Assembly: GCF_006345805.1 (NCBI RefSeq) | Contig: NC_043001.1 | Span: forward strand, 35,092,001-35,156,000 | Reading direction: 5' to 3' | Length of the DNA: 64,000 bases | From: Octopus sinensis | Taxonomy: Eukaryota | Translations under genes and position numbers: made by a program | The notes under the pieces: generated by a model | The model's input: only the letters and a program-made list of their open reading frames with translations | Databases searched by the model: none | What the model was told of the DNA's origin: nothing | In this document: one piece after another, positions 611 to 63,643 of the stretch | How positions within the stretch are numbered: position 1 is the stretch's first letter | Layout of the letters: every line of letters begins with the position of its first letter

Positions 611-1647
611 GAAAAGAAAAAAGAAAATTACAGCTACGTTTCCTTTGACCCTAGAAGTCAATTAAATAATTTGTTATAGATTAACTAAATGGAGAGTGGT
701 CCAAAATTTGCGAGACAACTGCTCAATCTTGGGAGGTTGATGTTCTTCAGTTTGCCAACAGAAATTTTTTCCTATGCCTGCATTTGCTTAATATTTCGGA
801 TCTGGATTTAAATATTGTAATGGAGTTCGTGGATTTCAAATGAATATGTGAACTTTCAGATTTTACATACAACGTATTTTTTTTTTATTTGCATATAGCA
901 TGAATTTTTCCATGATTCTCATCTTCATTGTATATGGTATGCATTTGGTCTTCAAACCCTATACGTGGCTAGACAATTAAGTGGCTTTAATTTTGTTGAT
1001 GTGCTGGAAAGAAGACTGATTGTTTGCCTAATGTCTTTTAAATTTGTCTTTGCATAAACCGATGCAATCTCCCTTTTCCTGGAGATAACAAGTGGGTTTC
1101 TACATAATGATGTATTCTGCAAGAAATAACACCCAAATCCGTCTCAAATCTTTTATATTAAATAAGAAAAGACACATTAAATATTGTATTACGAAATACC
1201 TCTAAACATGAGATGGCTACGTTTAGAATAATTTTACTCTTAGTTTTGCAAAAAAAAAAAAACAGCAAAATCCCGAACGAAACAAAATAAATAGTACTTA
1301 TTTCGAACGACCCCAGAAAAATAAAATCAAAGAGGTGAGTGGCAGGAATTTATCCTAGAGTAACTATGTACGTGTACTTCAGAGACCGAAATATGAGTAA
1401 TTCAAACAAATAAAAAGGTGTTTTTACTCTGTTCATATCCCGACTTAACATTCTAATAATAATCTACGACTGTGATAGAAGGTTAGACAGCTGGCAAGCT
1501 GATATCCAATCTTTGTGGGGGTTTTTTGTAGATTTTATTTTACATTATCGATTCAAGAACATGGAAAAGGAAATCCAACTGAAACCGTATTTGGCCATAG
1601 GACACAGACATGGTTAAGTATCATAAGGTATATTGTTTGCTCAATGT

Positions 1648-1880
1648 AAGGCGGCGAGCTGGCAGAAACGTTAGCACCCCGGGCGAAATGCTTTGCGGTA
1701 TTTCGTCTGCCGTTACGTTCTGAGTTCAAATTCCGCCGAGGTCGACTTTGCCTTTCATCCTTTCGGGGTAGATAAATTAAAGTACCAGTAACGCACTGGG
1801 GTCGATGTAATCGACTTAATACCTATGTCTGTCCTTGTTTGTCCCCTCTATTTTTAGCCCCTTGTGGGCAATAAAGAAAT
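1648..1880 (+). mobile_element. SINE family A, full length, tail A1 (Tx1-like)
   Basis: A-box-like TGGCAGAAACG, B-box GAGTTCAAATTCC, central CCTTTCATCCTTTCGGGG..GATAAA..AAGTACCAG block (resembles Deu/Nin-type SINE domain, from memory); 18-bp TSD AGGTATATTGTTTGCTCA at 1626-1643 and 1881-1898. Confidence 0.9.
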
Positions 1881-3435
1881 AGGTATATTGTTTGCTCATC
1901 CACCACTCTCATAAAGAGGATAATAGCAACGTTTATTAAATTTATATTTTCGGTTTCTGAATATTTTATTGGCCTCGTAAAAAAAAAAAAAAGGTAGGAG
2001 AGAAAAAGAAAAGGGCAGAAACACTAACATCACAAGGTTTCTTCCGTTACTAATATTACGGTTTATCGAGGTTAAACTCAGGTTTACAAATTCAGATTCT
2101 TTGTTCCCTTATCAGAACTAATCCTTTGTGACATGTTGTACTCATTTATACATATATTTTTTAATTTCAATTTCAGGGTTAATGCTTAGGTGATCGTCAG
2201 GTGTTGGAAGACATGACATTTCAAGCGGAAATGCAAAGAAGTAGGAATAATCCCAACTACTAAATCAGATATATAGTTTAATAGACAAGTGGCTCGTCTC
2301 TCTTATATGGTCTACTTAAGTTCAAACATACACTCACATGTTTACATCTCACATAAACATACATGCGCATACACGCTTATAAACACGTATATGAGCATGC
2401 ATAATTACCTAGAAAAATCATACTACTTTTGCAGATACACACGCTTCCCTTTCGCATTCTTTTATATCTACCGATAGCTACATGCTTGTTTTTTATAAGG
2501 AATGTACAGCAAGCGCATGAAAAATCATAGACACATATATGTGCCTGTGTGTGTGTCTCTTAGTCTTTACATATACATATATATATATATAAAGCTGTAC
2601 ATTATGTATGTGTTTCTATATATCAGAGTGTGTTAGAACTTATGATGCTAGAGATGCATAGATTGACATAAAAACGAATAGGGAAACTGATATTTATTTT
2701 CGTACAAATTTGTAAGATCCCTGGTTCTGGTGCTGTCCTACCTTTTGCAACCGGCGTAACCAAATTATCTCCGATATACCCAGGAAGCCCTACAATTTCT
2801 TGTAGAAAGATATATGTCATTCGTCGGAAACACACTGCCTTGTGTCCCAATTCTAATATCATCCGATCCGAACCTGCTACGAACCACACCATCTGCCAAT
2901 ACCTCAAATATACAGGAGACATCTATTAAAACGTCATTTCCCTAGACCTTGAATCTTTCTACCTTTTTTATGTGCACCAGTATGTTTTTTGTACTTCGAT
3001 ATGAAACGGAAACTTACAATCCAAATTATATTTTAGTGCAACATTAAACAATATGGTACAAGCAGTGATGTTACCCTTGACATCAAAAGATCACTCGACT
3101 ACTGCTTTCTCTCAAATTGTTTTTAAAAAAGCTCCTCACCTACAGATTTTATCCCTCACATATGAATCACTAACGTCTTGTAAGATGGTAGTCTCAGGAC
3201 GTATGCAACTGGGGTTCTACATGACCCAAAATCTATCAGCCTTGATGTATCTCAGCTCTAGTTCAGATTTTGTCCTGCATATTCTTTCTCTTATACAAGC
3301 ATTTGACTACATATCCAACAAAGTCCTTTTTTTTCTCGATTATATTACCCTTTGTTTTTCTCAAATCTTTCCTATTTAAGCGTCATCTACAAATAAACTA
3401 GACACATCACGCTAAATATCTGTTCACGCCACAAA

Positions 3436-11270: not shown

Positions 11271-12004
11271 AAAAGAATATATTTACGCAACATAAATAAT
11301 TTCTGGATGCATTTTCAAAAGTGGTTTTTAACTTTAGCACAATCCCAGTTATTTGAGTAGTCGTATTTATAATCATTTCCATTGACAACAGTTCTGCACT
11401 AGTATTTATTTCTTCAACTCTAGATGTTTAAATGAAGCACATACAAGTCTGTAAACACATCGTCCTAAAAATATTTAAAAATATTTAAAAATATTTAAAA
11501 ATAAAATATTTCTATATATACCCTTAAAATAGGTTTATGTTAGTTGGAAAACTTACATCTTTCTTTGAACTAAGAACACCGACATTATTTTTTCTCTCTA
11601 AAATTCCTTGTTGATTTACCTGTGTTGCAAATATATTTTAGTTTTTCTTCGATAAACTGTAGAATTTCTCTGGACTACTACCCTCTCTATCCTTCCACTT
11701 TTCCTTTAATACGTTGAGCTACAATAGATAAGACAAATTCCTTGATCTCACTAAGACTAGAACGACTAAAAAGGTTATATAATCTGCTTTTTTTTTCTCT
11801 GGTTCACTAAGATTAAAACTAAACTGTGTTCAATTTTTTTCTCATTCCCTCCACAAAATTTATTTTCTCTTATAAGATACGATATTTACAAAATGAGAAT
11901 TGCAAATCCCAAACGGATTGTAATTTTACAACTGCAACGTTTACAATATGTAAAAATATTATGATTGATTCTTCTAGAAGAAGAAACAATGCAAATAAAT
12001 ATTG

Positions 12005-12798
12005 ATTTCAAATTTTGGCACCACGACTGCCATTTCGGAGGCAGGGGTAAGACGATTACATCGAACTAGTATTCAACTGGTACTTACTTTATCTACTGCG
12101 AAACGATGAAAAGCAAAGTCGACCTCGGCGAAATTAGAACGCAGAACATTAAGACAAGATTCTTATTTCTTTATTGCCCACAATAAAGACGGAATACCTC
12201 TTTCTTTATTGCCTACAAGGGGCTAAACATAGAGGGGACAAACAAGGACAGACAAACGGATTAAGTCGGTTACATCGACCCCAGTGCGTAACTGGTACTT
12301 TATTTATCGACCCCGAAAGGATGAAAGGCAAAGTCGACCTCAGCGGAATTTGAACTCAGAAGGTAACGGCAGATGGAATACCTATTTATTTACTACCCAC
12401 AAGAAGCTAAACACAGAGAGGACAAACAAGGACAACAAACGGATGAAGTCGATTATATCGACCCCAGTGCGTAACTGGTACTTATTTAATCGACAACGAA
12501 ATGATGAAAGGCAAAGTTGACCTCGGCGGAATTTGAATTCAGAACGTAACGGCAGACGAAATACCTATTTCTTTACTACCCACAAGGGGCTAAACACAGA
12601 GGGGACAAACAAGGATAGACAACCGGATTAAGTCGATTACATCGACCCCAGTGCGTAACTTTTACTTAATTTATCGACCCCGAAAGGATGAAAGGCAAAA
12701 TCGACCTCGGCGGAATTTGAACTCAGAACGTAATGGCAGCCGAAGTACTGCGAAGCATTCCGGCCGGCGTGGTAAGTATTCGGTTAGCTCGCCGCCTT
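12005..12798 (-). mobile_element. SINE family A tandem array: one head, three ~184-bp bodies, a mini-unit and an old terminal unit
   Basis: Unit junctions ATACCT at 12194, 12378, 12561 (periods 184 and 183); single head at about 12740-12798. Confidence 0.9.
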
Positions 12799-12819
12799 AA
12801 AGCAAATCGGTATTGCTAG

Positions 12820-12967
12820 GGCAGTTACGTTCTGAGTTCAAATTCCTCCGAGGTGGTCTTTGCCTTTCATCCATTCGGGGTCGATAAAGTAAGTAACAGT
12901 TGCATACTGGGGTTCGATCTAATCGGCTGGCCCCCTCCCCCAAAATTTCGGGCCTAGAGCAGAAAAG
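12820..12967 (+). mobile_element. SINE family A, 5'-truncated, tail A2
   Basis: B box and central block intact; TSD-like TATTGCTAG at 12811-12819 and 12970-12978. Confidence 0.85.
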
Positions 12968-13174
12968 TATATTGCTAGAGTAGTACGTCAAAGTGGACTG
13001 CGCAGTAAAAAAAGAAAAGATTTCATTGCAACAACCATTGGTTTCGTAATTATTATTATATGCTAGGTATGCATAGGCAAAAAGATGTTAATAACACAAT
13101 TCCACATTTCAGCGTCCTTCATAGACTGGTTGCGTGTCAGTGAATAAGGAAAATATTTTTCACCCAAATACCTA

Positions 13175-13404
13175 TTTCTTTATTACCCACATGGGGCTAA
13201 ACATAGAGGGGACAAACAAGGACAGACAAAGGTGTTAAGTCGATTACATCGACTCCAGTGCGCAACTGGTACGTAATTTATCGACCCCGAAAGAATGAAA
13301 GGCAAAGTCAACCTCGGCGGAATTTGAACTCACAACGTAACGACAGACGAAGTACCGCTCAGCATTTCGCCTGGCGTACTAACATTTCTGCCAGCTCGCC
13401 GCCT
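13175..13404 (-). mobile_element. SINE family A, full length, tail A1
   Basis: TSD TTTTTCACCCAAATACCTA at 13156-13174 and 13405-13423. Confidence 0.9.
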
Positions 13405-14315
13405 TTTTTCACCCAAATACCTAGACATTTAATTGTTCAGCCAAATGTATATATTTTTAGTTTGTTAAACCGAGGTTACAATGAAATTACTATGAAACAT
13501 TATAGCCATATGAGAATGATAATTTTTCGCACAAAAACCCCCAGACTAAAAAAAAATGTATTTATGAATAGATATATTTGTTCAAACTGCATACTTTAGG
13601 GACAAGTTTTCTGTGCAGGAAGTCCTACACTCGAACATAGGAAATTAAAATTTCTTTCGGTATTCTGTAATCGAAGGAAGTCTATCGCATAGTTTCTAAA
13701 AATACCTCATTCATTGAAATAAAGGATGTGTTTTTGGACAGCTTATTTCTGAAGGGAGAAAAAGGTTGGGATATGTTATTAAATGGCTCTCATTGTCAAT
13801 TAACCCAATGGTTTATGAATTTAAGTACTGGTTAATAAAATTAGCATATGTCTGAGAGGTTATGCATTGTGCTATTGATATTCGAGTAATAGGCATGTTA
13901 ATATTAGTTTCACAAAAACGTTTACGATTACCTCTTCCTCTCCCTCTCTCCCCCTCTCTCTCTTTCTCTCTCTTTCTGTACATGTGTATATATGTGTGTG
14001 TTTGTGCGTGTATTCAGGTGTGCTATGGAGGATGTGCCTGCCGCTACGTTTTGTTGCCGTACATATTCGATAGGTTTCTTACAAAAAAAAAACTAATGCT
14101 CTTAGCTTAGACTTTTTTGCTGACAACCAGATCGAACTGTCTCGCGTGTAACTGCCCGAAACAGTAAGGACTTCTAGTAACTTGACTGATAAAAGAAGGC
14201 CACGAATGACGCGTCTTATTTTGCCTGTCTTTCTAATGGTTGTTTCTACTGTACGCCTTTGGATCGTCTATCTGCCCGTATGCTTTATTGTCCTTTATTG
14301 CGTTTGTATTCCATA

Positions 14316-15770: not shown

Positions 15771-16390
15771 ATATATAAATTTATGAACCTGTTATATGTA
15801 TGTAAAGACAAAGATATAGATAATATTAGATAAAAATGCAAAAGAATCAAATTTAAAAAAACGTCGCGTCAAATAACAACAGAATATCCACATTTTTAAA
15901 AAACATTTGGCTACGCTTCATGATTCCTATATTATATTTATTGGTGTTTAGTCGCCACTGATCTTTGTACAGACGTTTAACGTGAAACATGATGTTGACA
16001 TCAAGAATGATTGTAACAAGACTTCAGGTATATATATACACATGAACATAGATATAACTACACAAACTTATAGATAAAAAAAGCAAAAATGTCATAAACA
16101 TACATGTACACATTTGTGTGTTGGCTTATATTAATTAATGTGCGCGTATATATATATGTATATGTATATATGTTGGCTTATAGAAATTAGTATATATTTA
16201 TGCGTGTGTGTAGAGAGAGAGAGAAAGAGAGAGAGTGAGTCGACGCAGAGTTGACGTGAACGTACATAAAGCAGACAATGCAGTCGCAAAAAAGAAAAAG
16301 AATGCAGACACTAGGTCACTTTTCAGCATAGAAGCATAAAGCTTGATTACTTTTAAAAACGCATAAAAATATGAATGCACGTATATATCT

Positions 16391-16622
16391 ATTTCTTTAC
16401 TACCCACAATGGGCTAAACACAAAGGGGACAAACAAGGACAGACAAACGGATTAAGTCGATTATATCGACACCAGTGCGTAACTGGTACTTATTTAATCG
16501 ACCCCGAAAGGATGAAAGGCAAAGTCGACCTCGGCGGAGTTTGAACTCAGAACGTAACGGCAGACGAAATACGGCTACGCATTTCGCCCGGCGTGCTAAC
16601 GTTTCTGCCAGCTCGCCGCCTT
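16391..16622 (-). mobile_element. SINE family A, full length, tail A1
   Basis: TSD ACGTATATATCT at 16379-16390 and 16624-16635. Confidence 0.9.
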
Positions 16623-21663: not shown

Positions 21664-22016
21664 GAGAGAAAGAGAGAGAAAGAGAGAATGAGAAAGAGGG
21701 AGATATTTATATGTATACATATATATCTGTGCGTGTCTGGTGATCTGTTTTGATAGATTAGAGTAATTGTTGCTATATTTTTTCATCTATTCCTTATCAT
21801 ACAAGGGGCATAAGGACGAAAGTTTGTGTCAAGCCACATAAGCTCTCACTACTTTGAAAGTTTAATCCCTGATGGTCGCAATATCCCCTTTGTAAATCTC
21901 AAATAAGCTGGACTGGAAATAAAATCACAGTTTTATTGATATTGTTGATTTATTACTGCTGTTTTTGTTGACACTGACTGTTAAGCAACAAAACAATGCT
22001 AAGATGAATTTTATTG

Positions 22017-22231
22017 TCTACTTCTAGGCACAAGGCCCGAAATTTGGGCGGAGGGATCCAGTCGATTAGATCGTCCCAAGTACGCAACTGGTACTTAATT
22101 TATCGACCCCGAAAGGATGAAATGCAGATTCAACCTTTGTTGAATTTGAACTCAGAACGTACAGACAAACAGACGAAATAACGTTAAGCATTTCGCCCGG
22201 CGTGCTAACGTTTCTGCCAGCTCGCCGCCTT
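22017..22231 (-). mobile_element. SINE family A, full length, tail A2
   Basis: Head CTGCCAGCTCGCCGCCTT, central block and CTAGGCACAAGGCCCGAAATTTGG tail (plus strand). Confidence 0.85.
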
Positions 22232-23379: not shown

Positions 23380-23597
23380 AAGGCGGCGAGCTGGCAGAAA
23401 CGTTAGCACGCCGGGGGAAATGCGTAGCCGTATTTCGTCTGTCGTTACGTTCCGAGTTCAAATTCCGCCGAGATCGACTTTGCCTTTCATCCTTTCGGGG
23501 TCAATAATTTAAGTACCAGTTACTCACTGGTGTCGATGTAATCGACTTAATCCGTTTGCCCTCTTTGTGTTTAGCCCCTTGTGGGTAGTAAAGAAAT
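23380..23597 (+). mobile_element. SINE family A, full length, tail A1 (internally shortened)
   Basis: TSD ATATATACATAC at 23359-23370 and 23598-23609. Confidence 0.9.
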
Positions 23598-23706
23598 ATA
23601 TATACATACTCACACACACATACAAAAACGCACACATACATATAATATATATATATACACATACACAGATACACCCCCATATGCATATACGCGTGTGCGT
23701 TTATGC

Positions 23707-23756
<50 letters not shown>

Positions 23757-23937
23757 CCGTCCGTCCTTGAGGTTCGCTTACGGGAACCGTTTTTTCTTTG
23801 AGTACGCATATAAACTCCCCTATTTTATTATGTCGTTTACTATTTAGTGATTCTAATCTGCAACAGCGGTTTTATGGGATCGTATCGAGTTCTGTCGATA
23901 TAACGTAGGATAAATACATCAATATCAATGATAATCC

Positions 23938-24301
23938 TTTCTACAGGAAGCACAATGTCTCAAATATGGGGTAAGGGATTAATTCGTTTACATCGTCCCA
24001 GTGCGTTACTGGTACGTACCTATTTAATTCACCACGAAAAGATGAAAGGCAAAGTCGACCTCTGCGGAATACCTATTTCTATTTCTTTACTACCCACAAG
24101 GGGCTAAACACAGAGAGGACAAACAAGGACGGACAAACGGATTATATCGACCTCAGTGCGTAACTGGTACTTAATTTATCGACCCCGAAAGAATGAAAGG
24201 TAAAGTCGACCTCGGCGGAATTTGAACCTTGAGCGTAGCGGCAGACGAAATACCGCTAAGTATTTCACCCGGCGTGCCAACACTTCTGCCAGCTCGCCAC
24301 C

Positions 24302-24302
<1 letters not shown>
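23938..24302 (-). mobile_element. SINE family A dimer (young A1 unit joined to an older partial unit)
   Basis: Junction GCGGAATACCTATTTC at about 24065-24080; one head at 24250-24302. Confidence 0.8.
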
Positions 24303-24380
<78 letters not shown>

Positions 24381-24386
<6 letters not shown>

Positions 24387-31975: not shown

Positions 31976-32186
31976 AAGGTGCCAACGCGGCAAAATTGTT
32001 AGCACGCCAGTCAAAATGCTCAGCGGCGATTTGTCTGTATATACGTTCTGAGGTGAAATTCCGCCGAGGTTGACTTTGCCTTTCATCCTTTCGGGGTTGA
32101 TAAATTAAGTACCAGTGAAACACTGGGATTGATGTAATAAAGTTACCTCCTCCCCTAAAATTTCCCGCCTTGCACCTTTAGTAGAA
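31976..32186 (+). mobile_element. Old SINE family A directly after the Tx1 tail
   Basis: Diverged head, AAATTCCGCCGAGG, central block; ATTATTATT on both sides. Confidence 0.75.
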
Positions 32187-32197
32187 ATGATTATTAT

Positions 32198-32345
32198 TCT
32201 TTTCTACTCCAGGCACAAGGCCCGAAATTTAAGGGAAGGGAGCCAGTCGATTAGATCGACCCCAGTATGCATCTGGTACTTAATTTATCGACCCCGAAAG
32301 GATGAAGGGGAAAGTCGGCCTCGGCGGAGTTTGACCTAGAAACGT
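32198..32345 (-). mobile_element. SINE family A, 5'-truncated, tail A2 (tail-to-tail with previous copy)
   Basis: TTCTACTCCAGGCACAAGGCCCGAAATTT tail and central block. Confidence 0.8.
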
Positions 32346-39728: not shown

Positions 39729-40498
39729 ATGATGGATGGAGGGATAGATGGATATGTATGCATATAATCACACGTAAATACATACTATGGACTTAAATAT
39801 ATACATAGAAAGACATAGCTAATATAAATGAATATACAATGGTTTAACATTCTGCATTCGTAGGATTTCGTATTTGCTTTTTATGCAGTCAATCATATTC
39901 TGCTTCATATCATACTCTAAATATAAATTTATCATAAAAAGTCGGATTGTAGTGCTTTAGAAAAATAAATATTTGCTCTGAAAAATAAAATCAATGAAAA
40001 CAAGAATTATGCAAATAATAATAGAATATTATATGAAAAGTAATACCTAATCAAGATATCAACATAAAATACTAGATCCGTTTTATTTTTTATCTCACAA
40101 CATATGAAATCTCACATTAATACATCACATACAAACACTCACGCACATACAGAAAACCACCCGAAGATTCAGTCGCACAAAAACTGCACACATTTATATC
40201 AACCATTTTTAGTATATGCACACATTCTTTTCTTTTTAGTAGTGCTGTCAGTTATACTCACATCCACTTTTTCCTTATTGTATTTTAAGCTATGAAACAC
40301 AATGATATTTATTCTGTTCTATACTTTTGTTTGTTCAAGAACTAAATGCTTAGTGAATTATTATACATTTTTCGGCTGAGAAAGAAAAAAAAAGAGGATA
40401 TTAACAATTTGTATTTAGTTTAGCCTTTTATTAATATTGATTTATATTTGACTAGATATAAAGTCATGCAATGGAGGTGATGTTTTCGATAGAATATT

Positions 40499-40897
40499 CT
40501 TTTCTACTCCAAGCACAAAGCCCGAAATTTTGGGGGAGGGGATCAGTCGATTAGATCGACTCCAGTAAGCTACTGGCGCTTAATTTAATCGACCCCGAAA
40601 GGATGAAAGGCAAAGTCGATCCCGGCGAAATTTGAACTCAGAACGTAGAGACAGACGAAATACCTATTTCTTTACTACCCACAAGAGGCTAAACACAGAG
40701 AGGAGAAACAAGGGCAGACAAAGGAATTAAGTCGATTATATCGACCCCAATGCGTAACTGGTACTTATTTAATCGACCCCGAAAGGATGAAAGGCAAAGT
40801 CGACCTCGGCGGAATTTGAACTCAGAACGTAGCAGCAGGCGAAATACCGCAAAGCATTTCGCCCAGCGTGCTAGCATATCTGCCAGCTCGCCGTCTT
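40499..40897 (-). mobile_element. SINE family A dimer: head + A1 unit + A2 unit inside a single TSD
   Basis: Junction CAGACGAAATACCTATTTC at 40652-40670; TSD GATAGAATATT at 40488-40498 and 40904-40914. Confidence 0.9.
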
Positions 40898-41175
40898 ATT
40901 ATTGATAGAATATTGCATATGTATACTTCTGATATGTTACTTAATGGTCCTAATGGATCTAAGGCAAAATTGTGCTAGGTAAGTTTTCAATATGGAGCGT
41001 GTACTAACTACATGTAATATACATAGAGTACACTTTCGACTAAAATTTTACATCACCGTTAAAAAGAAAAGAAAAGCACAGCATTTTATCCGATATTCAA
41101 TTTTACAGCAAAGGCTCCGTCACAAAATTTTTCTATATAATTGTAATAAATTTAACTTTAGAGATGTTGGTAATT

Positions 41176-52628: not shown

Positions 52629-52690
<62 letters not shown>

Positions 52691-52694
52691 TTTA

Positions 52695-53080
52695 GGTGCC
52701 ACGCTAGGAGAAACTTAGCTTGCCGGACAAGATGCTTAGTGGCATTTTGTCTGAGTATACGTTCTGAGTTCTGACGAAATCGATTCGCCATTTTTTCGTG
52801 TGTCTTTACGTTCTAAGTTCCAACGAAGCCGACTTTGCTTTCATCATTTCGGGGTCGATGAAATAAGTACCACTTGAACATTAGGATTCGATGTAAACGA
52901 TTTACCCACTCCTATGAAATTTGCTGGCCTTGTGCCAACATTTAAAATCATTATCAATACTTAGACGACAAGCTAACAGATTGCTTAGCGGCATTTGTTC
53001 TGAATCTATAAATTGTGAGTTCAAATTCCGTTGTAGTCAAATTTGTCTTTCATCCATTCAGGATAGATAACATATAGTAA
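52695..53080 (+). mobile_element. Two to three old, rearranged SINE family A copies
   Basis: Repeated diverged TTACGTTCT.AGTT and CTTTCATC.TT.CGG.GTCGAT blocks. Confidence 0.6.
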
Positions 53081-53123
53081 CGGCCAATGAAATCGTTTTT
53101 GTTTCCTGTTCTCCTTACCATAA

Positions 53124-59344: not shown

Positions 59345-59577
59345 AAGGCGGTGAGCTGGCAGACACGTTAGCATGCCGGGCGAAATGCGTAGCCGTATTT
59401 CGTCTGCCGCTACGTCCTGAGTTCAAATTCCGCCGAGGTCGACTTTGCCTTTCATCCTTTCGGGGTCGATTAAATAAGTACCAGTTACGCCCTGGGGTCG
59501 ATATAATCGACTTAATCCATTTGTCTATCCTTGTTTGTCCCCTCTATGTTTAGCCCCTTGTAGGTAGTAAATAAATA
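59345..59577 (+). mobile_element. SINE family A, full length, tail A1, nested in copy B
   Basis: 19-bp TSD AGTATAA(A/T)GCTCGGGAATT at 59326-59344 and 59578-59596. Confidence 0.9.
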
Positions 59578-59602
59578 AGTATAATGCTCGGGAATTGAAG
59601 AA

Positions 59603-61750: not shown

Positions 61751-63643
61751 CGCAACTTGATAATTAAAAATGTAAGTACAAGACATTTCCTTTACAATTC
61801 ATTGCATTCATCTTCATCAACAAACATTGATCAAGCAATTATATGTTTATGTCGTGAGCGGTGAGAAACACGACCTGTTCAATATTGTGGGACGCTGATT
61901 TAATTGAAAGAAAACTACTCGAGAATATCATTTTTATTAAAATGAAATGGATTACAACAACACATGCATAGCATGCTTACATAGAACAGGCATAGAGTCA
62001 TATACATGCAGACCCACACATATATGGAGAAATATAGGTTACACGTTAGCTTAAATGTGTAGTTGGCTATTCGAGATCCTATTCGGCCAGTAGACTTTCA
62101 AAACCTTTCGTACAGACTTATTTTATAATACAGGGATGACGGTCATATAGTCACTCATAATTTAAACGGTCCTGAGTAAGATAAACTTAAGAAGAATCTG
62201 ATTACATTCTTCTAAAGAATGGCCTTACGGATTACAATAGAAAGTAACCTTTATAATGTTAGATTTTTTTAGATATCAACTTAGATTTGCAATTAGGTGA
62301 ATTTAAACCTTATCGCAAGCCCAATGATAAATTATGTTATATTAGCAAAGAATCAAATCATTCATAATTGTCTAGTTTTAATGGTTATTGTTCGTCTAAG
62401 TAGGGTGCTTACTTGTGTTCAACCGACACTGAAATGGCGCAGCTTAGAACTACTTATAAAAGTGCTACAAATAACAAGTATTCGTTTTAATTATTTGCAT
62501 ATCATTTCTATATTTCTAAGAGATTAAAGGAAATTATTTCACATTTTAAAAGGTAATGGGAGAAAATAGTGTGTGTAGTTATAAACTGCAATACCTAAAA
62601 AGGATAGGATGTGTAAGGTTAGATCCCCTTTAATAAAAAAAAAACGTCTTTCAATCAGATCTTCTTTGATGTTAACCATCAACAACAAGAACAAGAACAT
62701 TAGGCATATCTCCACCTATGCGAATTATCATAAATATATACATGTTTAGACAACTTCTAAAGTAATCGTTTGTGACGTTACTTCCGTCGGAAAGTTAAGT
62801 GGGTGACCTTTTGAATAATTCCAAGAATTTAGTTAAGAACAAGAAAAATATGTTCTCCCTTAAATTCACGCCAACAATAAATATGTGTAAAAATTACTTT
62901 CTGTTTGTCGAAATTCTTCAAAGAAAATTATCATTGCCGACGCAGAAATATATTTTGTGACCAAACCGATAAAATACAGCTCATTAAGTATTTCCCTCGT
63001 GAATAAGATAACATCAGATTTTACGACCAAGTTAACTGTCAAAACGAATCATTCATACTGCTTTATATATGTGATAGTTTGCTAGATGTGCCACCACGAT
63101 AAATTTTTATGATATTTTTATTCCGAATATACTAAGTATAGAGAAACTAAATCTCATATATTGAACACTGCAATATGAAACCAAACAAAACATCCCTCTT
63201 ATAACTCCACTTTTATAAATACGTGTGTATGCATACATAAATGCATACGTACGTACGCACATAATACATACATATATATATATATATGCATATTTTTGTG
63301 TGTGAGTGTGGTGTGTGTGTGTGCATAAATACACATATATACATACATATATATATATCTGTGTGTGTATATACATATATATATATATATATGTCCGTAA
63401 GTGAACATATGTGTCTTCTCATATGTATATCGCTGAATGCATTCGTACGTGTTTGTGTGCGCGTGTGCATGTGCATGTATGTGTGAGTGCGTGCGTGCGT
63501 GCCTGACTGCCTGTTTATGTGTGTGTGAGTGCGTGCGTGCGTGCCTGTCTGCCTGTTTATGTGCGTGCGAGACTAAATCAATGTTCTGAATTTTTTCAGC
63601 TGGCCTTGAGAAGTTACTTAAGCAAATATCACAATCCCTACAA

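What the first reader, a model, noticed from the sequence alone, without database searches (positions are those of the whole stretch)
12005..12798. SINE appears to build tandem arrays by inserting into its own internal target site
Seen: one head followed by three ~184-bp bodies. Each junction falls at the same point (sense ...GAAATAGGTATTTCGTCTG or close variant). In intact copies this point reads GCGGTATTTCGTCTG or GCCGTATTTCGTCTG, i.e. the element carries its own NNRTAT target just upstream of the B box. The units are not clones: the 12194 unit carries markers of the 1648-type copy (TTATTGCC, ATAGAGGGG, TTACATCG), the 12378 unit matches the 40660 unit (TTACTACC, CACAGAGAGG, TTATATCG, CTTATTTAATCG), and the most degenerate unit is 3'-most. 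Inference: serial retrotransposition into the internal site, with the cDNA end joining seamlessly by homology. This would grow a satellite-like array under one Pol III promoter; read-through could give multimeric RNAs. I do not know of a description of this in cephalopods.
Basis: partly seen in the sequence, partly recalled or inferred. Interest (0 to 1): 0.78.

Follow-up and report, generated by a model that had tools for sequence, protein, structure and literature searches.

The report
Headless SINE copies stacked inside older SINE
A short mobile element has repeatedly landed at one fixed spot inside an older relative, each time adding a copy that lacks its own front end, so a small tandem array has grown by jumping rather than by local copying.

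Summary
Window 11997-12798 (minus strand is sense) has one SINE head, then three 183-184-bp bodies joined at ...AAATAGGTAT|TTCGTCTG. After them come a 28-nt 3' fragment of the same SINE ('A-type') and a last unit from an older SINE family ('C-type').

- **One insertion block:** a 9-bp target-site duplication (TSD) bounds the block. The joined flanks rebuild the head of a third, inverted SINE.
- **Different sources:** the three bodies carry three marker haplotypes, and two recur in dispersed copies. They are not each other's closest relatives.
- **Older head:** the head differs from the A consensus at 20.6% of positions, against 2.9% for the adjoining body (p=3e-5).
- **Target match:** solitary A copies (5 of 5 full length) have TSDs starting RGTAT or TATAT. 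The internal junction site reads GGTAT.

Best reading (0.6): young A elements integrated serially at the internal GGTAT of an older host SINE. Homology with the host fixed the 5' join, so each event added a headless unit. Two other loci (40485-40897, 23931-24302) show A-into-B composites.

This head is decayed and the first unit carries TTTT. Genome-wide frequency could not be tested. Similar one-head arrays are published for a clam and for squamates, so this is a new variant of a known kind.

The parts
12799..12807 (-). 5' copy of the TSD of the whole block (sense ATTTGCTTT)
   Evidence: It matches 11988-11996 at 8 of 9 positions. P is about 0.006 against random windows of the same sequence. 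The joined flanks rebuild a SINE head colinearly.
12750..12798 (-). Head (element positions 1-49) of the host SINE; old and decayed
   Evidence: 10 of 49 mismatches to the A consensus, against 5 of 170 in the adjoining body.
12745..12749 (-). Head-proximal internal site (AGTAC here, GGTAT in the consensus)
   Evidence: Alignment to intact copies.
12561..12744 (-). Unit U1: A-type body, positions 55-238, ending in GGTAT; consensus-like haplotype
   Evidence: Positions 69-238 differ from the consensus at 5 of 170. TTTT lies at 12697-12700.
12378..12560 (-). Unit U2: A-type body with the haplotype of the dispersed copy c40660
   Evidence: Its nearest neighbour is c40660 (distance 0.092; 61% bootstrap).
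12194..12377 (-). Unit U3: A-type body with the haplotype of the dispersed copy c1648
   Evidence: It is flanked by GGTATTCCATCT (5') and GGTATTCCGTCT (3'), which share T56C.
12187..12193 (-). TCCGTCT: host sequence just 3' of the site; with the preceding GGTAT it forms the left TSD copy for the 28-nt fragment
   Evidence: The right copy reads AGAATCTTGTCT, the last 5 nt of the fragment plus the first 7 nt of U4 (12152-12163).
12159..12186 (-). 28-nt 5'-truncated A-type 3' end (TTATTGTGGGCAATAAAGAAATAAGAAT)
   Evidence: 2 mismatches to the A tail 20-mer.
11997..12158 (-). Unit U4: body and tail of the older C-type host SINE
   Evidence: Its tail is shared with the copy at ~52690-52985. Core divergence from A copies is 20%.
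11988..11996 (-). 3' copy of the TSD of the block (sense ATTTGCATT)
12808..12975 (+). Inverted B-type SINE into whose head the host SINE inserted; it continues at 11988-11996
   Evidence: the joined flanks align without a gap across the junction to B copy 22003-22231.
40485..40914 (-). Second composite: head plus A body (40660-40897), junction AAATAGGTAT|TTCGTCTG, B-type body and tail (40499-40659), flanked by AATATTCTATC (40488-40498 and 40904-40914)
23931..24302 (-). Third composite: head plus A body, duplicated AAATAG, GGTAT, then a B-type unit lacking about 26 nt after the site

Best explanation
**Background (shown).** Three related SINE families in the window share a head and core but have different 3' tails.
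- A is young, with about 9% pairwise core divergence.
- B and C are old, at 20-22%.

**Target site.** A-type RNA ends in ...AAAUAGGUAU. A copies integrate at sites whose TSD begins RGTAT or TATAT, so the nicked target strand can pair with the RNA 3' end (shown by the TSDs). All three families carry GGTATTT at positions 50-56, just 3' of the head.

**Order of events at 11988-12807.**
1. A C-type SINE inserted into the head of an inverted B-type SINE, making a 9-bp TSD (shown).
2. A-type RNAs were then reverse-transcribed from nicks at the host's internal GGTAT, and later at the junction copies of that site (inferred).
3. The second nick falls about 11-20 nt downstream. The freed top-strand end is therefore homologous to positions 50-61 or beyond of the incoming cDNA, anneals there and primes second-strand synthesis (inferred).
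4. The guest's own head is never integrated, so each event adds one 184-bp unit (positions 55-238) with a seamless junction (inferred).
5. One early event aborted after 28 nt and joined without homology.

The likely order is host, 28-nt fragment, U2, U3 (into the junction 3' of U2), then U1. This order is weakly supported.

The result is one old head, several young bodies from different source genes, and the host's own body and tail at the 3' end.
For: 1. **Units are not local duplicates.** There are three multi-site haplotypes: U2 = c40660 type, U3 = c1648 type, U1 a third. They do not form a clade, and U2's three nearest sequences are dispersed copies.
2. **Head older than neighbour.** Head 14/68 against U1 body 5/170, Fisher p=2.7e-5; non-CpG sites only, p=5e-4. 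Heads of the three composites (30/201) are more diverged than heads of five solitary copies (20/340, p=6e-4), while the bodies are equal (25/497 against 49/831).
3. **Hosts belong to older families.** Core pairwise divergence is A-A 9.4%, B-B 20%, C-C 22%. B units inside composites are as diverged as solitary B copies.
4. **Site equals target.** Solitary A TSDs start GGTATAT, GGTATTT, GATATAT, AGTATAA and TATATAC, with lengths of 11 to about 20 nt. The internal site reads GGTATTT.
5. **Enrichment at the site.** Six of 11 A 3' ends in the window abut the SINE-internal site. Only about 5 of 105 RGTATWW sites are SINE-internal.
6. **Head loss is specific to nesting.** 5 of 5 solitary A copies are full length; 6 of 6 nested ones lack their own head.
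7. **TSD traces inside the array.** U3 is flanked by GGTATTCC[A/G]TCT on both sides, sharing a T>C seen in no other copy. The 28-nt fragment is flanked by ...TCCGTCT and ...CTTGTCT.
8. **One insertion block.** An 8/9 TSD with P about 0.006, and an empty-site reconstruction.
9. **Family specificity.** Only A, the family whose target motif matches the site, is found as guest. No B-B or C-C arrays occur among 9 B/C copies.
Against: - The head-proximal site copy (AGTACTTCGGCTGCCATTACG) and the junction 3' of U1 (GGTATTTCGTCTGCCGTTACG) should be TSD twins. They differ at 4 of 21 positions, against roughly 1-2 expected; two of the four are CpG transitions.
- The ages of U1, U2 and U3 (5/170, 13/169, 9/170) do not differ significantly (p=0.15), so serial timing is not proven.
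- The junction at 24062-24084 lacks about 26 nt after GGTAT. This is either a later deletion or a different join point.
- In the 40485-40897 composite the head cannot be assigned to host or guest.
- No partner LINE or endonuclease was identified, so the homology-primed 5' join is inferred and not observed.
- All evidence comes from three loci in one 64-kb window.
Confidence: 0.6

Rival explanations
1. Single-event chimera by reverse-transcriptase template switching. Reverse transcription starts on a B- or C-type RNA at a genomic target. At positions 50-54 the nascent cDNA end (...ATACC) re-pairs with the GGUAU 3' end of an A RNA, and this repeats several times. The multi-unit cDNA is then integrated once.
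For: - There is one TSD around each composite.
- The units come from different RNAs.
- GGTAT provides a 5-nt microhomology at every junction.
- The ages of U1-U3 are statistically indistinguishable.
Against: - The head should come from the same RNA as U1, yet it is about 7 times more diverged.
- B and C units in composites are as old as solitary B and C copies, not as young as A.
- Nothing explains why the enzyme would leave its template exactly at positions 50-54.
- The TCCGTCT/CTTGTCT repeat around the 28-nt fragment, and the private T56C shared by both flanks of U3, are unexplained.
- A hybrid remains possible: a multi-unit cDNA primed at the host's internal site.
Confidence: 0.15
2. Local DNA-level duplication. 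An A element duplicated its body by unequal exchange or slippage between the two GGTAT motifs (positions 50-54 and the 3' end). The array then grew by unequal crossing-over, as proposed for clam and squamate SINE arrays.
For: - A direct 5-nt repeat brackets the unit.
- The literature explains similar arrays this way (PMC11481361, PMC10702118).
- U1 and U3 are fairly close to each other (distance 0.087).
Against: - U2 carries a complex marker (GATTAAAT against GATAAATT) plus two further linked states that are identical to the dispersed copy c40660.
- Within-array mean distance (0.112) is no lower than the distance to dispersed copies.
- The 3' units are of other families in all three composites.
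- The head is older than the bodies.
- The 34-nt stretch containing the 28-nt fragment differs from the corresponding end of U3 plus its junction at 9 of 34 positions. That is too many for a duplication younger than U3.
Confidence: 0.07
3. The composite formed elsewhere and was retrotransposed here as one multimeric RNA, using the C-type tail. On this view the single TSD and the old head are properties of a multimeric source gene.
For: A single TSD bounds the block. The consensus A body has no T4 run, so read-through is conceivable.
Against: - The three composites differ in unit order and content (A-A-A-fragment-C, A-B, A-B'), so no shared master is visible.
- The head is heavily mutated in its promoter-like part.
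- This reading only moves the question of how the composite first formed to another locus.
Confidence: 0.1
4. Rolling-circle or ribozyme-type tandem element (retrozyme or Penelope-like), or an assembly artefact.
For: The unit length of about 184 bp lies in the range of such repeats.
Against: - Rfam gave no hammerhead or any other match, even at E<=10 across 11950-13450.
- The units are heterogeneous and the last is from another family.
- The units differ by 9-13%, so collapse or expansion of identical repeats by an assembler is not an issue.
Confidence: 0.03

Closest known systems
TSD1-(SINE)n-TSD1 tandem-like SINE arrays in the blood clam Scapharca broughtonii (Mob DNA 2024, PMC11481361)
   Same: A first unit with a complete head, then repeats truncated in the head at one fixed position, then a final unit with a complete tail, all within one TSD. 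Arrays that include elements of another family are also reported. The host is a mollusc.
   Different: In the clam the units are also truncated in the 3' tail, and the authors discuss unequal recombination between TSDs. Here each unit keeps a complete A 3' end, the units come from different source copies, and the junction coincides with the family's own target motif. That points to retrotransposition.
SINE-derived satellites (sSats) of squamate reptiles (Vassetzky et al. 2023, PMC10702118)
   Same: Tandem repeats made from part of a SINE, with a longer terminal unit that reaches the SINE terminus. Short, variable loci are seen as the 'library' stage of satellite birth.
   Different: sSats reach up to 1000 homogenised units and favour subtelomeres. 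Their origin is ascribed to duplication or unequal recombination. Here there are 3 units, not homogenised, and each looks like a separate insertion.
Head-to-tail multimers of full-length SINEs (B2, Dip, Ves; PMC8466645), possibly formed by integration into the tail of a resident SINE
   Same: On one reading the resident SINE offers the preferred integration site for the next insertion, so clusters build up. That paper leaves open whether these multimers arise this way or move as dimeric templates.
   Different: Those units are complete, each with its own head and tail. Here the site is internal and the guests lose their heads.
Retrotransposition-mediated SINE gene conversion (proposed for Alu by Kass, Batzer and Deininger 1995; cited from memory)
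   Same: A cDNA primed at a nick in a resident SINE is resolved by homology with that resident copy.
   Different: There priming is in register at the tail, so sequence is replaced without gain. Here priming is out of register (guest 3' end on host position 50), so homology-guided resolution adds a unit.
Template-jump chimeras of LINE reverse transcriptases (U6-L1 type; from memory) and partial tandems of Penelope-like elements (from memory)
   Same: Head-to-tail joins of retro-copied RNAs within one TSD.
   Different: Those joins normally occur at RNA 5' ends. The age differences found here within one array do not fit a single event.

Membership tests
SINE (short, LINE-mobilised, Pol III-type retroposon) | Short (<600 bp), dispersed, multi-copy | tested here: met
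   The A consensus is 238 bp. The window holds 7 dispersed A copies plus the 3 array units and a 28-nt fragment, at least 9 B/C copies, and there is one copy in an unrelated ENA contig, L014.
SINE (short, LINE-mobilised, Pol III-type retroposon) | Flanked by target-site duplications of variable length | tested here: met
   TSDs of 11 to about 20 nt flank 5 solitary A copies, 11 nt flank the 40485-40914 composite, and 9 nt flank the array block.
SINE (short, LINE-mobilised, Pol III-type retroposon) | Head derived from tRNA, 7SL or 5S RNA, with internal A and B boxes | tested here: inconclusive
   ARAGORN found no tRNA in the window and nothing credible on the consensus head. Rfam gave no tRNA match even at E<=10. 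There is only a by-eye B-box-like GAGTTCAAATTCC at positions 73-85.
SINE (short, LINE-mobilised, Pol III-type retroposon) | 3' tail shared with a partner LINE | not testable with these tools
   No LINE with an A-, B- or C-type tail lies in the window, and no host genome was reachable.
CORE-SINE superfamily / octopus OR2 (Ohshima and Okada 1994) | Central domain homologous to the CORE domain; sequence identity to OR2 | not tested
   The resemblance of GCCTTTCATCC...GGGGTCGATAAATTAAGTACC to the CORE domain is recalled from memory. PMC4758252 states that OR2 is a CORE-SINE, but no reference sequence was available.
SINE-derived satellite DNA | Head-to-tail repeats of a SINE portion | tested here: met
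   TRF: period 183/184, 3.0 copies.
SINE-derived satellite DNA | Amplification to long arrays with homogenised units (concerted evolution) | tested here: not met
   There are only 3 units, 8.7-13.3% apart, and no closer to each other than to dispersed copies. Other loci in the genome could not be examined.
Nested target-primed insertion | Host older than guest | tested here: met
   Head 20.6% against adjoining body 2.9% (p=2.7e-5). Host families show 20-22% pairwise divergence, against 9.4% for A.
Nested target-primed insertion | Guest flanked by a duplication of the host target | tested here: inconclusive
   The U3 flanks GGTATTCCATCT and GGTATTCCGTCT match at 11/12 and share a private change. 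The 28-nt fragment's flanks match at 7/12. The U1 flanks match at 17/21. Because guest and host are homologous at this site, a TSD cannot be told apart from guest sequence by sequence alone.
Hammerhead retrozyme / Penelope-type tandem | Self-cleaving ribozyme in each unit | tested here: not met
   No Rfam match at the gathering score across the window, nor at E<=10 in 11950-13450.

The most novel reading that the evidence does not exclude
A SINE family whose 3' end and target preference match a motif conserved inside its own superfamily. Retrotransposition into resident copies, resolved by guest-host homology, then systematically adds headless units. This would be a retrotransposition-driven route from dispersed SINE to tandem array (proto-satellite), distinct from unequal crossing-over. 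It could also explain the one-head arrays reported in clams and squamates.
Probability: 0.4. Interest if true: 0.65.

Novelty: new variant of a known kind. Interest (0 to 1): 0.5.

Why it matters
How dispersed repeats turn into tandem repeats is an open question in satellite-DNA biology. The first duplication step is usually assigned to unequal recombination without direct evidence.

This locus offers a case where the sequence argues for another first step. Units come from different source genes, the head is old, and the junction equals the element's own target motif. Together these point to repeated insertion into an internal self-like target with a homology-guided 5' join.

If this is general in this genome, where SINEs are reported at about 12% in Octopus vulgaris (PMC13282606), it makes three testable predictions:
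- a fixed junction k-mer;
- hosts that are older than their guests;
- unit-number polymorphism between species.

It would also mean that repeat annotators which merge adjacent hits under-count insertion events.

Tried and rejected
1. **More copies through proteins.** I searched the antisense junction-spanning ORF of the consensus dimer against 5.8 billion proteins. It returned one 109-aa ORF on a 543-bp ENA contig, which is a monomer.
2. **Junction 18-mer in metagenome contigs.** There were 13 hits. None contains the SINE, so they are chance matches.
3. **Core 20-mer elsewhere.** Prokaryotic genome contigs gave one chance hit and viral contigs gave none.
4. **tRNA origin of the head.** ARAGORN and Rfam found nothing.
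5. **Ribozyme or rolling-circle idea.** No Rfam hit.
6. **Age gradient along the array.** U1 2.9%, U3 5.3%, U2 7.7%; the differences are not significant (p=0.15). There is no simple 5'-to-3' increase among the A units.
7. **Assigning composite heads to a family by markers.** This was uninformative. The c40660 head variant GCTTTGCGG also occurs in the solitary A copy c1648.
8. **The 28-nt fragment as a recent local duplicate of the U3 end.** Rejected, because the 34-nt stretch containing it differs from the U3 end at 9 of 34 positions.
9. **Literature.** No description of this in cephalopods turned up in the searchable library.

Full report
**1. What is there**

Tandem Repeats Finder reports a single long-period array in the window: 12187-12748, period 183/184, 3.0 copies, 87% matches. 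The element's sense strand is the window's minus strand.

A BLAST of the region against the window and inspection of flanks define a ~238-bp dispersed element, here called A-type.
- Full copies lie at 1648-1886(+), 13166-13405(-), 16385-16622(-), 23380-23598(+) and 59345-59582(+).
- Two further copies belong to composites, at 24079-24302(-) and 40660-40897(-).
- The consensus begins AAGGCGGCGAGCTGGCAGAAACG... and ends ...GTAGTAAAGAAATAGGTAT.

Two further families share the head and core but have other tails.
- B-type has the tail ...CCCCTCCCCCAAAATTTCGGGCCTTGTGCCTGGAGTAGAAAAGAWTAT. It has seven copies.
- C-type has the tail ...TGTGCCAAMATTTRAAATCAWTAT. It occurs at 11997-12158 and ~52690-52985.

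**2. Anatomy of the array (sense orientation)**

| Part | Coordinates | Note |
|---|---|---|
| TSD | 12807-12799 | ATTTGCTTT |
| Head, positions 1-49 | 12798-12750 | |
| Internal site | 12749-12745 | AGTAC here, GGTAT in the consensus |
| U1 | 12744-12561 | 184 nt, positions 55-238 |
| U2 | 12560-12378 | 183 nt |
| U3 | 12377-12194 | 184 nt |
| Host 7-mer | 12193-12187 | TCCGTCT |
| A 3'-end fragment | 12186-12159 | 28 nt |
| C-type body and tail | 12158-11997 | |
| TSD | 11996-11988 | ATTTGCATT |

All three A-A junctions read ...A[A/G][A/T]AGGTAT|T[T/C]C[G/A]TCTG. This is the A 3' end fused to position 55, with GGTAT shared between the 3' end and positions 50-54. Its 'degenerate 3'-most unit' is really another family.

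**3. The block is one insertion**

The 9-mers immediately outside the head and the C-type tail match at 8 of 9 positions. A match this good within 12 nt of the tail end occurs in 0.6% of random windows of the same sequence.

Joining the flanks and removing one TSD copy gives a sequence that aligns without a gap across the join to the head and body of B copy 22003-22231. So a head-bearing SINE with a C-type tail inserted, in inverted orientation, into an older B-type SINE (11988-11996 plus 12808-12975).

**4. The units are not local duplicates**

At seven variable sites the units have three haplotypes.
- U2 has TAAAT/A/T/G/TAG, identical to c40660 at these five sites. This includes the complex GATTAAAT-against-GATAAATT marker, also shared with c16385 and c59345.
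- U3 has AAAT-type/G/C/A/CAA, the c1648 haplotype.
- U1 is consensus-like.

In a neighbour-joining tree of positions 69-238 the units do not form a clade. U2 pairs with c40660 (61% bootstrap) and U3 joins c1648 and c13166 (50%). Distances within the array (0.087-0.133) are no smaller than distances to dispersed copies. Support values are modest because the sequences are short.

**5. Head and last unit are older than the bodies**

- Against the A consensus the array head (positions 1-68) has 14/68 mismatches and the adjoining U1 body 5/170. Fisher p=2.7e-5, and p=5e-4 without CpG positions.
- Solitary copies show no such contrast: 2/68 against 9/170, 6/68 against 12/170, and so on.
- Pooled, the heads of the three composites (30/201) are more diverged than the heads of the five solitary copies (20/340, p=6e-4). 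The bodies do not differ (25/497 against 49/831).
- Pairwise core divergence is 9.4% within A, 20% within B and 22% within C. B units inside composites are as diverged as solitary B copies.

So young A bodies lie between the head and the body of an old element.

**6. The junction equals the A target**

Solitary A copies carry TSDs of 11 to about 20 nt whose first bases overlap the element's 3' end:
- GGTATATTGTTTGCTCA
- GGTATTTGGGTGAAAA
- GATATATACGT
- AGTATAA[A/T]GCTCGGGAATT
- TATATACATAC...

The conserved internal site reads GGTATTT. Of the 11 A 3' ends in the window, five lie in unique DNA and six abut the SINE-internal site (U1, U2, U3, the 28-nt fragment, 40660|40659, and 24079 region|B). 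Only about 5 of 105 RGTATWW sites on both strands are SINE-internal.

All five solitary copies are full length, and all six nested ones lack a head of their own. Only A, the family whose target matches the site, occurs as guest.

**7. Traces of separate events**

- U3 is flanked by GGTATTCCATCT (5') and GGTATTCCGTCT (3'). The two agree at 11 of 12 positions and share a T>C at position 56 that no other copy has. This is what a 12-nt TSD of a U3 insertion into the junction 3' of U2 would look like.
- The 28-nt fragment is flanked by GGTATTCCGTCT and AGAATCTTGTCT (7/12). This looks like an old, 5'-truncated A insertion with a 12-nt TSD.
- The 34-nt stretch containing the fragment differs from the corresponding end of U3 plus its junction at 9 of 34 positions. 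That is too many for a local duplicate younger than U3.

**8. Mechanism proposed**

*Shown:* an old host element; young guests from at least three source lineages; a fixed junction at the family's target motif; a single outer TSD.

*Inferred:* each guest was reverse-transcribed from a nick at GGTAT. The second nick, 11-20 nt downstream, leaves a top-strand end identical to positions 50-61 or beyond of the guest. That end anneals to the cDNA there and primes second-strand synthesis. The guest's head is therefore excluded and a seamless 184-bp unit is added. It is an out-of-register version of the retrotransposition-mediated SINE conversion proposed for Alu (from memory). Each new junction recreates the target, so arrays can grow from any junction.

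The divergence values (U2 7.7%, U3 5.3%, U1 2.9%) and the U3 TSD suggest the order fragment, U2, U3, U1. The differences are not significant (p=0.15).

**9. Weak points**

- The head-proximal site copy and the U1|U2 junction differ at 4 of 21 positions, more than expected for TSD twins of a young insertion. Two of the four are CpG transitions.
- The third composite (24062-24084) lacks about 26 nt after GGTAT.
- The head of the second composite cannot be assigned to host or guest.
- No partner LINE was found.
- Everything rests on three loci in one window.
- The organism was not verified by any tool. No coding ORF is present, and GC content is 34%.

**10. Rivals**

- *Single-event template switching* explains the single TSD and the mixed units. 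It does not explain the old head, the old 3' units or the internal TSD traces.
- *Local duplication or unequal crossing-over* is contradicted by the haplotypes, the foreign 3' units and the old head.
- *A multimeric master copy* is not excluded, but the three composites differ in content.
- *Ribozyme or rolling-circle elements* are excluded by Rfam and by the heterogeneity of the units.

**11. Promoter and read-through claim**

The head is mutated at 14 of 68 positions, including GAGCTGGCAGAA>GAGCTAACCGAA. U1 has TTTT at 12697-12700. This array is unlikely to give multimeric Pol III transcripts now. The A consensus body has no T4 run, so the idea remains open for younger arrays.

**12. Comparison with the literature**

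- One-head arrays within a single TSD, sometimes including other families, were described in the blood clam in 2024 and discussed in terms of unequal recombination (PMC11481361).
- SINE-derived satellites with an extended terminal unit are known in squamates. The authors mention both unequal recombination and 'insertion into the same locus' (PMC10702118).
- Full-length head-to-tail multimers are common for B2 and Dip (PMC8466645).
- Searches found no cephalopod report.

The architecture is therefore known. Two things are new here: sequence evidence for a retrotransposition origin, and the specific self-target, homology-join mechanism.

**13. Verdict**

This is a new variant of a known kind, of moderate interest, pending a genome-wide test that these tools could not run.

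Noticed in passing
window 24303-24383 and 31990-32030: Two B-type heads abut (TTA)n/(ATT)n microsatellites, and B tails end in ...GAWTAT with TSDs starting AATAT/ATTAT. B-type SINEs may be mobilised by a LINE that targets TAA-like repeats.
   Followed up: no
window 32030-32345: Two B-type SINEs lie tail to tail in inverted orientation, meeting at ...GTAGAAATGATTATT|ATTCTTTTCTAC. Together they form a ~300-bp near-palindrome.
   Followed up: no
window 52690-53100: A C-type SINE has a duplicated stretch around the same internal site (GGCATTTTGTCTG...GTTC, then 15-20 nt of unknown origin, then GCCATTTTTTCGTGTGTC...). Another head-deleted SINE follows directly after its tail. This may be a further event at the internal site.
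   Followed up: partly
window 1644-1647, 16623, 40898-40903: Extra bases (ATGT, T, AATAAT) lie between the 5' TSD copy and the first base of the head in three insertions. They could be untemplated additions or transcription starts upstream of the head.
   Followed up: no
window 24073-24084: The A 3' end is duplicated (AAATAGAAATAG before GTAT). This looks like slippage at the start of reverse transcription.
   Followed up: no
L014 (ENA metagenome scaffold, 543 bp), 172-400: An 88%-identical full-length A-like SINE copy sits in a contig labelled as metagenome. It is probably host animal DNA in that sample.
   Followed up: partly
window 12697-12700: A TTTT run created by a C>T change in U1 would act as a Pol III terminator about 100 nt into the array.
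   Followed up: yes
whole window: There is no credible coding ORF. GC content is 34% and TRF lists 109 rows, mostly micro- and minisatellites, including a 42-bp minisatellite at 63475-63571. The shared SINE core resembles the CORE-SINE domain (recalled from memory, not tested).
   Followed up: no
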